This document shows positions 22,936 through 23,631 of a stretch of 63,203 nucleotides of DNA, in pieces. The notes beneath the pieces are model-generated. The model saw only the letters and a program-made list of their open reading frames with translations. It was not told where the DNA came from and did no database searches. The number at the start of each line of letters is the position of its first letter. Position 1 is the stretch's first letter. Source of the stretch: Octopus bimaculoides (Eukaryota); contig NC_068987.1 of the NCBI RefSeq assembly GCF_001194135.2, forward strand, positions 92,964,689 to 93,027,891, written 5' to 3'. The position numbers were made by a program, and so were the translations under genes.

Positions 22936-23212
22936 TACAGGCATTACCTATTACTTACATGGTCATATTTGTCTACGAAGCGTGGCGTCTTGAAGATCTG
23001 GATCTGAATTCTATGGAAAATCTATATAGTGAAACTTAGAAATTTATCAGCCTGCTAAGGAAAAAAGTAAGATACAATATAGACTTGTAAACCATTAATA
23101 TGCTTATGGCTGGAACACGAAATAGTGTGCCTTTCTTGGCAATGAATACATATATTGACACGTTTCCGGTGTCCTTATATTTGCGGAGGGGGGGACAAGC
23201 ACCCCCACCCAA

Positions 23213-23279
23213 CCTAGTCTGCATTCAGTGACATGTTTCTGAGTCATTGCTCGTCATCAGCCTGAAGTAGCAACACCAG
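23213..23279 (-). ncRNA. Type I hammerhead ribozyme, copy 1
   Basis: Minus strand CUGGUGUUGCUAC-UUCAGG-CUGAUGA-CGAG-CAAUGA-CUCA-GAAA-CAU-GUC|ACUGAAUGCAGACUAGG; core boxes intact; predicted cut between 23230 and 23229; G.A mismatch at the first stem I pair and C.A at the base of stem II. Confidence 0.8.
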
Positions 23280-23563
23280 CTGACTGAAGATGCACGACAA
23301 ACCCTCGCAAATATATATATATTCTTTGAAAACACATTCATTGATTACAAAAATTAGAAATGATCTAATTATAAATCTCACAGAGAGAATTATGCAGTAG
23401 TATTACGATAAAGCGGTTGTATACTGTCAGCTCAATGTGACAATCCCAATAAGGGAATCATACTGCTGATATTCAGCCCTAGGAGGCTAGACCGCTTCCT
23501 GTCGTCCTTGACATATTTCCTGTGTCCTTATAGATGCGAAGGGGAAAACAGTACCCCACACAG

Positions 23564-23631
23564 CCTAGTCTGCATTCAGGGACATGTTTCTGAGTCATTG
23601 CCCGTCATCCGCCTGAAGTAGCAACACCAGG
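23564..23631 (-). ncRNA. Type I hammerhead ribozyme, copy 2 (U4G core change)
   Basis: CCUGGUGUUGCUAC-UUCAGG-CGGAUGA-CGGG-CAAUGA-CUCA-GAAA-CAU-GUC|CCUGAAUGCAGACUAGG; perfect 6-bp stem I plus extended pairing; predicted cut between 23581 and 23580. Confidence 0.75.

What the first reader, a model, noticed from the sequence alone, without database searches (positions are those of the whole stretch)
23155..23631. Retrozyme-like element: tandem type I hammerhead ribozymes defining a 351-nt RNA
Seen: two direct repeats (23155-23279, 23508-23630). Each reads on the minus strand as stem I UUCAGG, CUGAUGA (copy 2 CGGAUGA), stem II with loop CAAUGA, GAAA, stem III ACAUGU, GUC, then (C/A)CUGAA. Stem I extends through a UAC/U internal loop into UGC:GCA and CCUGGU:ACUAGG. 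Cleavage at both GUC sites (23581/23580 and 23230/23229) would release exactly 351 nt with no ORF. The 67-nt ribozyme blocks differ at only 3 positions, while the adjacent ~55 nt of the repeat differ at more than 10, suggesting structural constraint. Established: a UAC bulge 5' of a 6-bp stem I and a hexaloop like CAAAUA form the loop1-loop2 contact of the Schistosoma type I hammerhead, and animal retrozymes are non-autonomous repeats with type I hammerheads that yield circular RNAs of a few hundred nt. Inference: this is a copy of a cephalopod retrozyme family that may make circRNA. I cannot tell whether it has been described.
Basis: partly seen in the sequence, partly recalled or inferred. 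Interest (0 to 1): 0.9.

Follow-up and report, generated by a model that had tools for sequence, protein, structure and literature searches.

The report
Decayed hammerhead-ribozyme retrozyme copy
This is a real but worn-out copy of a small mobile repeat that carries two self-cleaving "hammerhead" RNA motifs 351 bases apart; such repeats are already known from many animals, so it is a new example and not a new kind of element.

Summary
Two direct repeats (23155-23279 and 23508-23630, 86% identical) each carry a type I hammerhead on the minus strand. The predicted cleavage sites are exactly 351 nt apart.

Rfam 15 finds no hammerhead here, even at E<=10. A covariance model I built from 40 canonical type I hammerheads found in metagenome contigs (candidate excluded) hits both copies full length, at 40.0 and 39.4 bits. 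Decoys that match only the retrieval pattern score 9.5-12.4 bits.

The architecture is the canonical animal one: a UAC/U internal loop, 6-bp helix I with an extension, a CAAUGA hexaloop, and a palindromic ACAUGU helix III. That helix III is the weak newt/axolotl type that works as a dimer.

Both copies are damaged. The upstream copy has core U4->G. The downstream copy has an A·G mismatch at 1.1/2.1. Both share a C·A mismatch at 10.1/11.1, seen in 0 of 88 references.

Best reading: an old 1.36-unit insertion of a non-LTR retrozyme-type repeat, probably in an octopod genome and probably inactive at this locus. Family copy number, cleavage and circRNA could not be tested here. It is a new member of a known kind, of modest interest.

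The parts
23155..23630 (-). Whole element: 476 bp, about 1.36 units of a 351-nt repeat (repeat, spacer, repeat)
   Evidence: Homology between the two repeats starts exactly at CTGGTG and ends at GTCAA. No other full copy is in the window.
23508..23630 (-). Repeat copy A (5' copy on the minus strand), 123 nt
23155..23279 (-). Repeat copy B (3' copy on the minus strand), 125 nt
23564..23631 (-). Hammerhead A with extended helix I. Helix I is intact (6/6 bp) but the core reads CGGAUGA (U4->G). C10.1·A11.1 mismatch. C17 is at 23581.
   Evidence: R1 hit at 23567-23628, 39.4 bits, full model length. The minimum-energy fold shows the long helix I.
23213..23280 (-). Hammerhead B. The core CUGAUGA...GAAA...UC is intact. 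A1.1·G2.1 mismatch and C10.1·A11.1 mismatch. C17 is at 23230.
   Evidence: R1 hit at 23216-23277, 40.0 bits, E 1.2e-10. Exact match to the architecture pattern.
23230..23580 (-). The 351-nt unit between the two predicted cleavage sites. GC is 40.7%; the longest ORF that lies within it is 45 aa.
   Evidence: The circular fold is -95.7 kcal/mol, 69% paired, z -2.27 against shuffles.
23280..23507 (-). Single-copy AT-rich spacer of the unit (228 nt), which includes a short (TA)n run
22901..22927 (+). Inverted remnant with a hammerhead core block: CTGATGA AAGTG CAATGA CTCTT GAAA. It has no helix I and no GUC site. Whether it belongs to the same family is uncertain.
   Evidence: The pattern gives 2 matches in the window against 0 in 100 shuffles. 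Alignment.
22281..22340 (-). Degenerate partner of that remnant: a 60-nt inverted repeat, 73% complementary, reading CTGATAGAAGAGAAATGACTCGTGAAG
   Evidence: (I1)

Best explanation
This is an old, partly decayed genomic copy (about 1.36 units) of a non-autonomous, non-coding retrozyme-type repeat that carries a canonical animal type I hammerhead ribozyme.

How an intact copy would work (inferred from the family):
1. The minus strand is transcribed through two or more units.
2. Helix III is only the A15.1-U16.1 pair around a palindromic CAUG, so a single ribozyme is unstable. Two neighbouring ribozymes would pair their ACAUGU palindromes into a 6-bp shared helix III. This gives a domain-swapped double hammerhead, as in newt and axolotl.
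3. [quoted passage not shown]
4. A host tRNA ligase of the RtcB type closes this RNA into a circle.
5. A reverse transcriptase, possibly from a Penelope-like element, copies the circle for more than one turn, and the cDNA integrates. That would give partial tandems like this one.

What is shown here: the repeats, the ribozyme homology and architecture, the 351-nt spacing and the absence of an ORF.

What is inferred: transcription, dimeric cleavage, circularisation and retrotransposition.

At this locus the ribozymes are damaged (U4->G in A, A·G at 1.1/2.1 in B, C·A at 10.1/11.1 in both). Double cleavage is unlikely. At best, the intact core of B could cut the perfectly matched site of A in the swapped dimer.
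For: - Repeats and exact 351-nt spacing.
- Custom model R1 was built from 40 distinct canonical type I hammerheads. These show covariation: 96.7% of cells paired, 0 of 500 shuffles as high, and an unselected helix I extension 83% paired.
- R1 hits both copies end to end at 40.0 and 39.4 bits.
- Decoys holding all 19 fixed pattern bases but no helices score 9.5-12.4 bits. Intact references score 50-84 bits.
- Rfam recognises the reference ribozymes as Hammerhead_1 or HH9, which serves as a positive control.
- Features not imposed by the retrieval pattern agree with the 88 references. A U follows helix I (81/88), the helix I extension pairs 3/3, helix III is palindromic (66/88), H17 is C (79/88), and loop 2 CAAUGA is seen 5 times.
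- The geometry matches the Schistosoma-derived N79 ribozyme printed in PMC12550524.
- The weak helix III (one pair plus a palindromic tetraloop) with canonical loops 1 and 2 matches the description of axolotl HHR_Amex1. Repeat sizes of 170-400 nt, GC below 45-50% and no ORF, LTR, PBS or PPT match non-LTR retrozymes (PMC7229834; PMC7761336).
- The circular fold of the unit is more stable than shuffles: z -2.27, 3 of 200 shuffles as stable.
- Type I hammerheads are annotated in a cephalopod genome: 235 loci in Architeuthis dux (PMC6962438).
Against: - No Rfam hammerhead family matches either copy, even at E<=10 on stretches of 86-101 nt.
- R1's seed sequences were retrieved with a pattern modelled on the candidate and Schistosoma architecture. 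Part of the score is therefore circular, although the decoy baseline bounds that part at about 12 bits.
- There are only two copies, in one locus. No further full copy lies in 63 kb.
- No relative was found in the metagenome, viral or prokaryote collections, nor among predicted proteins.
- TRF calls no tandem repeat.
- No target-site duplication is evident by eye; this was not searched systematically.
- C10.1·A11.1 occurs in 0 of 88 reference ribozymes.
- Each copy carries a further damaging change.
- The lower divergence of the ribozyme block may reflect CpG decay and homopolymer slippage in the neighbouring block rather than selection.
Confidence: 0.72

Rival explanations
1. It is a remnant of a Penelope-like element (PLE): two pseudo-LTRs, each with its hammerhead, flanking what is left of an internally deleted element. 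On this reading it is not a free-standing retrozyme.
For: - PLEs carry hammerheads in their pLTRs and insert as partial tandems, often with inverted 5'-truncated copies (PMC8557442).
- A 2026 preprint argues that animal retrozymes derive from PLE pLTRs.
- An inverted pair of hammerhead-core remnants lies about 200-900 nt away.
- A compound microsatellite lies next to the element.
Against: - PLE hammerheads are described as minimal variants that lack the loop 1-loop 2 contacts (PMC7761336). This ribozyme has the canonical UAC/U loop and hexaloop.
- No ORF of 70 aa or more with an RT or GIY-YIG look lies within 19.9-27.5 kb.
- The only RT fragment is 11 kb away and matches only the generic RVT_1 family.
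- The repeats are only 125 nt long.
Confidence: 0.14
2. A single hammerhead-bearing short repeat (SINE-like, as Sm-alpha in Schistosoma, or one satellite unit) was duplicated at the DNA level by local tandem duplication or unequal crossing-over. No circular RNA intermediate was involved.
For: - There are only 1.36 units and no target-site duplication is evident.
- The surroundings are rich in direct and inverted repeats and microsatellites.
- The two copies have diverged by 14%.
- Most reference hammerheads in the metagenome contigs are single copies, not arrays.
Against: The unit length, GC content and single ribozyme per unit are what rolling-circle retrozyme copies look like. The element starts and ends at arbitrary points of the unit, as expected for more-than-unit cDNA. 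The sequence here cannot separate the two mechanisms.
Confidence: 0.1
3. It is a chance resemblance to a hammerhead inside an unrelated duplicated segment.
For: Rfam gives no hit. A relaxed descriptor hits 19% of shuffled windows. Fold z-scores of the ribozyme domains are unremarkable.
Against: The 19-base architecture pattern gave 0 matches in 100 shuffles. R1 scores both copies about 28 bits above the decoys. The unselected features also agree: the U after helix I, the 3/3-bp extension and the palindromic helix III.
Confidence: 0.01
4. It is a host-domesticated hammerhead that processes a host transcript, like the intronic HH9/HH10 ribozymes of amniotes.
For: None directly. Several reference ribozymes score best with the HH9 model.
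Against: Both copies carry damaging changes, the motif is duplicated within a repeat, and no gene context was identified.
Confidence: 0.02

Closest known systems
Metazoan non-LTR retrozymes (Cervera & de la Pena 2020, PMC7229834)
   Same: A type I hammerhead once per unit. The 351-nt unit falls within the 170-400 nt range. GC is low (40.7%). There is no ORF, LTR, PBS or PPT. The copy is longer than one unit, and the predicted circular fold is well paired.
   Different: Only 1.36 units are present and the ribozymes are damaged. Family copy number and circRNA are unverified. That paper describes invertebrate retrozyme hammerheads as having a stable helix III and cleaving as monomers; this one has the weak type.
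Newt satellite 2 / axolotl HHR_Amex1 hammerheads
   Same: Helix III is a single A-U pair capped by a palindromic tetraloop, together with the canonical loop 1-loop 2 elements. This implies dimeric (double-hammerhead) cleavage. The repeat unit is about 330-350 nt.
   Different: The host is an invertebrate (probably an octopod). C10.1·A11.1 replaces G-C. No high-copy satellite is shown.
Schistosoma mansoni Sm-alpha hammerhead (its engineered derivative N79 is printed in PMC12550524)
   Same: A UAC bulge lies 5' of a 6-bp helix I, opposite a single U, and the helix then continues. Helix II has 4 positions and is capped by a CAAxxA hexaloop. The core is CUGAUGA...GAAAC...GUC.
   Different: In N79 (an engineered variant), helix III is a stable hairpin, whereas here it is ACAUGU. 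The base pair of helix II is G-C there and C·A here.
Penelope-like element pLTR hammerheads
   Same: The direct repeats each hold a hammerhead. Helix III is short and palindromic. Inverted partial copies lie nearby.
   Different: PLE ribozymes are described as minimal and lacking the loop-loop contacts. No RT or GIY-YIG ORF is present here.
Rfam Hammerhead_1 (RF00163) and Hammerhead_HH9 (RF02275)
   Same: The consensus architecture is the same. These models detect the reference ribozymes used to build R1 at 28-52 bits.
   Different: Neither model reports the window copies, even at E<=10.

Membership tests
Type I hammerhead ribozyme | Conserved core C3-U4-G5-A6-N7-G8-A9 ... G12-A13-A14 ... U16.1-H17 in the right order | tested here: inconclusive
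   Copy B has the complete core (CUGAUGA, GAAA, UC). Copy A reads CGGAUGA, i.e. U4->G.
Type I hammerhead ribozyme | Three helices around the core, with helix I open-ended | tested here: met
   Helix I has 6/6 pairs in A and 5/6 in B, plus a 3-bp and a 5-6-bp extension. Helix II has 3 pairs plus a C·A mismatch. Helix III is A-U around CAUG.
Type I hammerhead ribozyme | G10.1-C11.1 (or G·U) pair at the base of helix II | tested here: not met
   Both copies have C·A. Among 88 references: G-C 72, G·U 6, C·A 0.
Type I hammerhead ribozyme | Canonical loop 1-loop 2 elements (UAC/U internal loop in helix I, CAAxxA hexaloop on helix II) | tested here: met
   The layout is the same as in N79 and in the reference set.
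Type I hammerhead ribozyme | Match to a covariance model of the family | tested here: inconclusive
   Rfam RF00163 and its clan give no hit at any threshold. Custom model R1 gives 40.0 and 39.4 bits against decoys at 9.5-12.4 bits.
Type I hammerhead ribozyme | Self-cleavage 3' of H17 | not testable with these tools
   This needs in vitro transcription of monomeric and dimeric constructs.
Animal non-LTR retrozyme | Head-to-tail repeats of about 150-450 bp, each with a type I hammerhead (at least two consecutive ribozymes) | tested here: inconclusive
   Two ribozymes lie 351 nt apart. There are only 1.36 units, and TRF reports no tandem repeat. One of the two motifs is incomplete.
Animal non-LTR retrozyme | Non-coding, low GC, no LTR/PBS/PPT | tested here: met
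   The longest ORF that lies within the unit is 45 aa. GC is 40.7%. The repeats are only 125 nt. PBS and PPT were not searched for specifically.
Animal non-LTR retrozyme | Multi-copy dispersed family in the genome | not testable with these tools
   No collection available here holds animal genomes as searchable DNA. There is no other full copy in 63 kb, only two core remnants nearby.
Animal non-LTR retrozyme | Expressed as linear and circular RNA of unit length | not testable with these tools
   This needs RNA data. The predicted circular fold is modestly more stable than shuffles, z -2.27.
Penelope-like element | ORF with RT and GIY-YIG endonuclease between the pseudo-LTRs | tested here: not met
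   Only 228 nt lie between the repeats. No ORF of 70 aa or more with domains lies in 19.9-27.5 kb. The RT fragment 11 kb away matches only RVT_1.
Penelope-like element | Minimal hammerhead lacking loop-loop contacts | tested here: not met
   The canonical UAC/U loop and hexaloop are present. Helix III, however, is minimal.

The most novel reading that the evidence does not exclude
The locus may represent a still-active cephalopod retrozyme family whose ribozyme is obligately dimeric and carries C10.1·A11.1 as its normal state. That mismatch could be tolerated as an A+·C wobble. Alternatively, A-to-I editing of A11.1 could convert it to a C-I pair. Coleoid cephalopods edit RNA heavily, and A·C mismatches are a favoured ADAR context (my own knowledge). 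In that case ribozyme cleavage and circRNA production would depend on RNA editing. Nothing here tests this. The two copies share the mismatch, which only shows that it predates their divergence.
Probability: 0.03. Interest if true: 0.8.

Novelty: new member of a known kind. Interest (0 to 1): 0.3.

Why it matters
It adds a probable cephalopod example to the widespread animal retrozymes that carry type I hammerheads.

It shows that the weak, dimer-dependent helix III, described as an amphibian trait, also occurs in an invertebrate-type genome.

It shows that Rfam's hammerhead models miss such copies, so genome annotations undercount them. An example is the 235 hammerhead loci reported for the giant squid.

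As a single decayed locus it has little biological weight by itself. If the family proves abundant and expressed, it would be a source of ribozyme-made circRNAs in cephalopods.

Tried and rejected
- Rfam 15 was run at gathering threshold on the whole window, and at E<=10 on 1 kb, 101 nt and 86 nt. No hammerhead was reported, only chance snoRNA-like hits.
- A strict family pattern found nothing in metagenome contigs. A family-specific 20-mer found nothing in prokaryote genomes or viral contigs. A looser viral scan gave one hit with non-complementary helix II, which is chance.
- I searched the protein database with translated frames of the repeat, hoping to catch spurious ORFs called on other copies. 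There were 0 hits.
- An exact-protein look-up of two window ORFs, meant to locate the source contig, found nothing on record.
- TRF calls no tandem repeat.
- blastn of the element against its flanks found nothing beyond (TA)n.
I used the ORF list instead.
- Thermodynamic folds of the single domains and cofolds show the long helix I but say nothing about the core.
One change is neutral (A-U to G·U in helix II) and two are damaging. The more diverged neighbouring block holds CpG sites and a G/C homopolymer.

Full report
**Observation**

The window holds two direct repeats, at 23155-23279 and 23508-23630. They are 125 and 123 nt long and 86.4% identical, with start-to-start spacing of 351-353 nt. 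Homology begins exactly at CTGGTG and ends at GTCAA on the minus strand. The element is therefore repeat, 228-nt spacer, repeat: 476 bp, or about 1.36 units.

- Copy A (upstream): UUCAGG CGGAUGA CGGG CAAUGA CUCA GAAA CAUG UC|CCUGAA.
- Copy B: UUCAGG CUGAUGA CGAG CAAUGA CUCA GAAA CAUG UC|ACUGAA.

C17 lies at 23581 and 23230, and the stretch between the two sites is exactly 351 nt. The longest ORF that lies within it is 45 aa.

**Is it a hammerhead?**

Rfam 15 gives no hammerhead hit. This holds at gathering threshold and at E<=10 on 1 kb, 101 nt and 86 nt.

A relaxed descriptor that I wrote (core, helix II of at least 3 bp with a base mismatch allowed, helix III of at least 1 bp, helix I of at least 5/6) finds copy B. 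It also hits 19% of shuffled windows, so it proves nothing on its own.

I therefore looked for an independent yardstick. The Schistosoma-derived N79 hammerhead printed in PMC12550524 has the same layout as the candidate: a UAC bulge, a 6-bp helix I opposite a single U, a 4-position helix II, and a CAAxxA hexaloop.

A scan of metagenome contigs with that architecture (TAC-N6-CTGATGA-N4-CAANNA-N4-GAAAC) returned at least 120 loci. The pattern says nothing about complementarity. Even so, about three quarters of the matches have complementary helices I and II (93 of 122; 88 of 116).

Forty distinct ones were aligned. They show strong covariation: 96.7% of cells are paired, and 0 of 500 shuffles reach that. 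A helix I extension that I had not selected for is 83% paired, with compensatory changes. Rfam recognises these sequences as Hammerhead_1 or HH9 at 28-52 bits. That also shows the Rfam tool works here.

The covariance model R1, built from them without the candidate, hits both window copies end to end. Scores are 40.0 bits (E 1.2e-10) and 39.4 bits.

R1's seeds were fetched with a pattern that copy B itself satisfies, so I measured the circular part of the score. Loci that match all 19 fixed bases but lack the helices score 9.5-12.4 bits with filters off. Intact references score 50-84 bits. The candidates sit about 28 bits above the pattern-only baseline, in the range of decayed or atypical members.

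Features not imposed by the pattern also agree with the 88 references:
- a U after helix I (81/88);
- a paired helix I extension (3/3 here);
- a palindromic helix III (66/88);
- C at position 17 (79/88);
- loop 2 CAAUGA (5 cases).

The pattern itself never occurs in 100 shuffles of the window. Chance is excluded. These are descendants of a canonical animal type I hammerhead.

**State of the two ribozymes**

Helix III is only A15.1-U16.1 around a palindromic CAUG (ACAUGU). PMC7229834 describes this form for axolotl HHR_Amex1 and the newt satellite: weak as a monomer, efficient as a dimer (also PMC6155905). One strong reference ribozyme, L041, has the same 6-nt geometry (ACGCGU).

Both copies share C10.1·A11.1 at the base of helix II. 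This state is seen in 0 of 88 references (72 G-C, 6 G·U).

Of the three differences inside the ribozyme block:
- one is neutral (A-U to G·U in helix II);
- one destroys a core position in copy A (U4->G; core positions other than N7 are intolerant of change, by established mutagenesis knowledge);
- one breaks the 1.1-2.1 pair in copy B (C->A).

The low divergence of the ribozyme block (3/67 against 14/54, p=0.001) is real. It is not evidence of maintained function at this locus. The more diverged neighbouring block contains CpG sites that have decayed in one copy, and a G/C homopolymer with an indel.

In a domain-swapped double hammerhead, the enzyme part of copy B (intact core, G2.1) would meet the substrate strand of copy A (C1.1) with a perfect helix I. 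The reverse combination is doubly defective. This is my inference from the sequences. At best one of the two cuts seems plausible, so release of the 351-nt RNA from this locus is doubtful.

**What the element is**

The following all match animal non-LTR retrozymes:
- unit length of 351 nt;
- GC of 40.7%;
- one type I hammerhead per unit;
- no ORF;
- no LTR-sized repeats;
- a copy longer than one unit with arbitrary end points.

The circular fold of the unit is -95.7 kcal/mol, 69% paired, with z -2.27 against dinucleotide shuffles. This is weakly in line with the highly self-paired circles described for retrozymes.

The host is plausibly an octopod. The best named relative of the RT fragment at 11684-12301 is an Octopus bimaculoides protein at 71% identity. 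The window itself is an AT-rich, microsatellite-rich draft scaffold with many gaps.

No paper in the searchable library describes cephalopod retrozymes. The giant squid genome paper lists 235 Rfam hammerhead_1 loci without further analysis.

**What could not be shown**

- No collection available here holds animal genomes as searchable DNA, so family copy number, arrays and a consensus are untested.
- Scans of metagenome, viral and prokaryote collections with family-specific patterns found nothing.
- A protein-database search with the translated frames found nothing.
- TRF does not call a tandem repeat. The TRF-plus-motif pipeline of the 2026 preprint would therefore not list this locus.
- I saw no target-site duplication in the flanks, but I did not search for one systematically.

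**Rivals**

*PLE pseudo-LTR remnant.* This is the main alternative and overlaps with the best explanation, since retrozymes may derive from PLEs. Three things speak against a PLE proper. The loop-loop elements are canonical, whereas PLE ribozymes are described as minimal. Only 228 nt lie between the repeats. No RT or GIY-YIG ORF is nearby.

*DNA-level duplication of a single hammerhead-bearing repeat.* This cannot be excluded from the sequence.

*Chance, or host domestication.* Both are very unlikely.

**Nearby remnants**

Close to the element lies a 60-nt inverted-repeat pair (22281-22340 and 22901-22960). Its arms carry the same core, helix II and CAATGA block (CTGATGA AAGTG CAATGA CTCTT GAAA; 0 of 100 shuffles). 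They lack helix I and the GUC site. This suggests more than one insertion or rearrangement of related sequence at this place. It recalls the tandem and inverted insertions of PLEs. I did not resolve it.

**Verdict**

This is a genuine but decayed retrozyme-type element with canonical type I hammerheads: a new member of a known kind. It is of modest interest for three reasons. Rfam misses it. It carries the dimer-type helix III outside amphibians. Cephalopod retrozymes appear not to have been described.

Noticed in passing
window 22281-22340 (-) and 22901-22960 (+): A 60-nt inverted-repeat pair (73% complementary, arms 560 nt apart, head to head). Its arms contain a hammerhead core, helix II and CAATGA loop block like the element's, but no helix I and no GUC cleavage site. 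It lies about 200-900 nt from the element's 3' end.
   Followed up: partly
window 23790-24130: A long compound trinucleotide microsatellite ((GCA)n, (GTA)n, (ATT)n, (GTG)n) about 160 nt from the element's 5' end. A short (TA)n run lies inside the unit at about 23310-23325. PLE-type elements are reported to favour microsatellite targets.
   Followed up: no
window 22513-22555 / 23063-23105 and 22766-22814 / 22835-22883: Two further imperfect inverted repeats (43 nt at 72%, and 49 nt at 71% with a 20-nt loop) lie just beside the element. The region is unusually rich in fold-back sequence.
   Followed up: no
window 11181-12301 (-): A reverse-transcriptase fragment (Pfam RVT_1) split by a frameshift. 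Its best named relative is an uncharacterised Octopus bimaculoides protein at 71% identity. This is the only clue to the source organism.
   Followed up: partly
window 31916-32365 (+): A 149-aa ORF with the HTH_48 domain of Mos1/mariner transposases. It is a mariner-type transposon remnant.
   Followed up: partly
loci L002-L121 (metagenome contigs): At least 88 canonical type I hammerheads with the UAC bulge and CAAxxA loop, in several sequence families. Most occur once per 1-11 kb contig, not in 150-450-nt arrays. 66 of 88 have a fully palindromic helix III. The source organisms are unknown.
   Followed up: partly
L096 (14-77 and 994-1057), L114 (13-94, 1048-1129, tRNA-like hit at 118-188), L075: L096 and L114 each hold two identical hammerheads about 980-1035 nt apart on contigs of about 1.1 kb. 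These may be assembled circles or tandem units of about 1 kb. L114 also has a tRNA-like hit of 33 bits. L075 holds about seven weak hammerhead-model hits.
   Followed up: no
whole window: The scaffold has many N runs, each flanked by (TA)n or (CA)n microsatellites. Repeats of this kind may be under-assembled in this genome.
   Followed up: no
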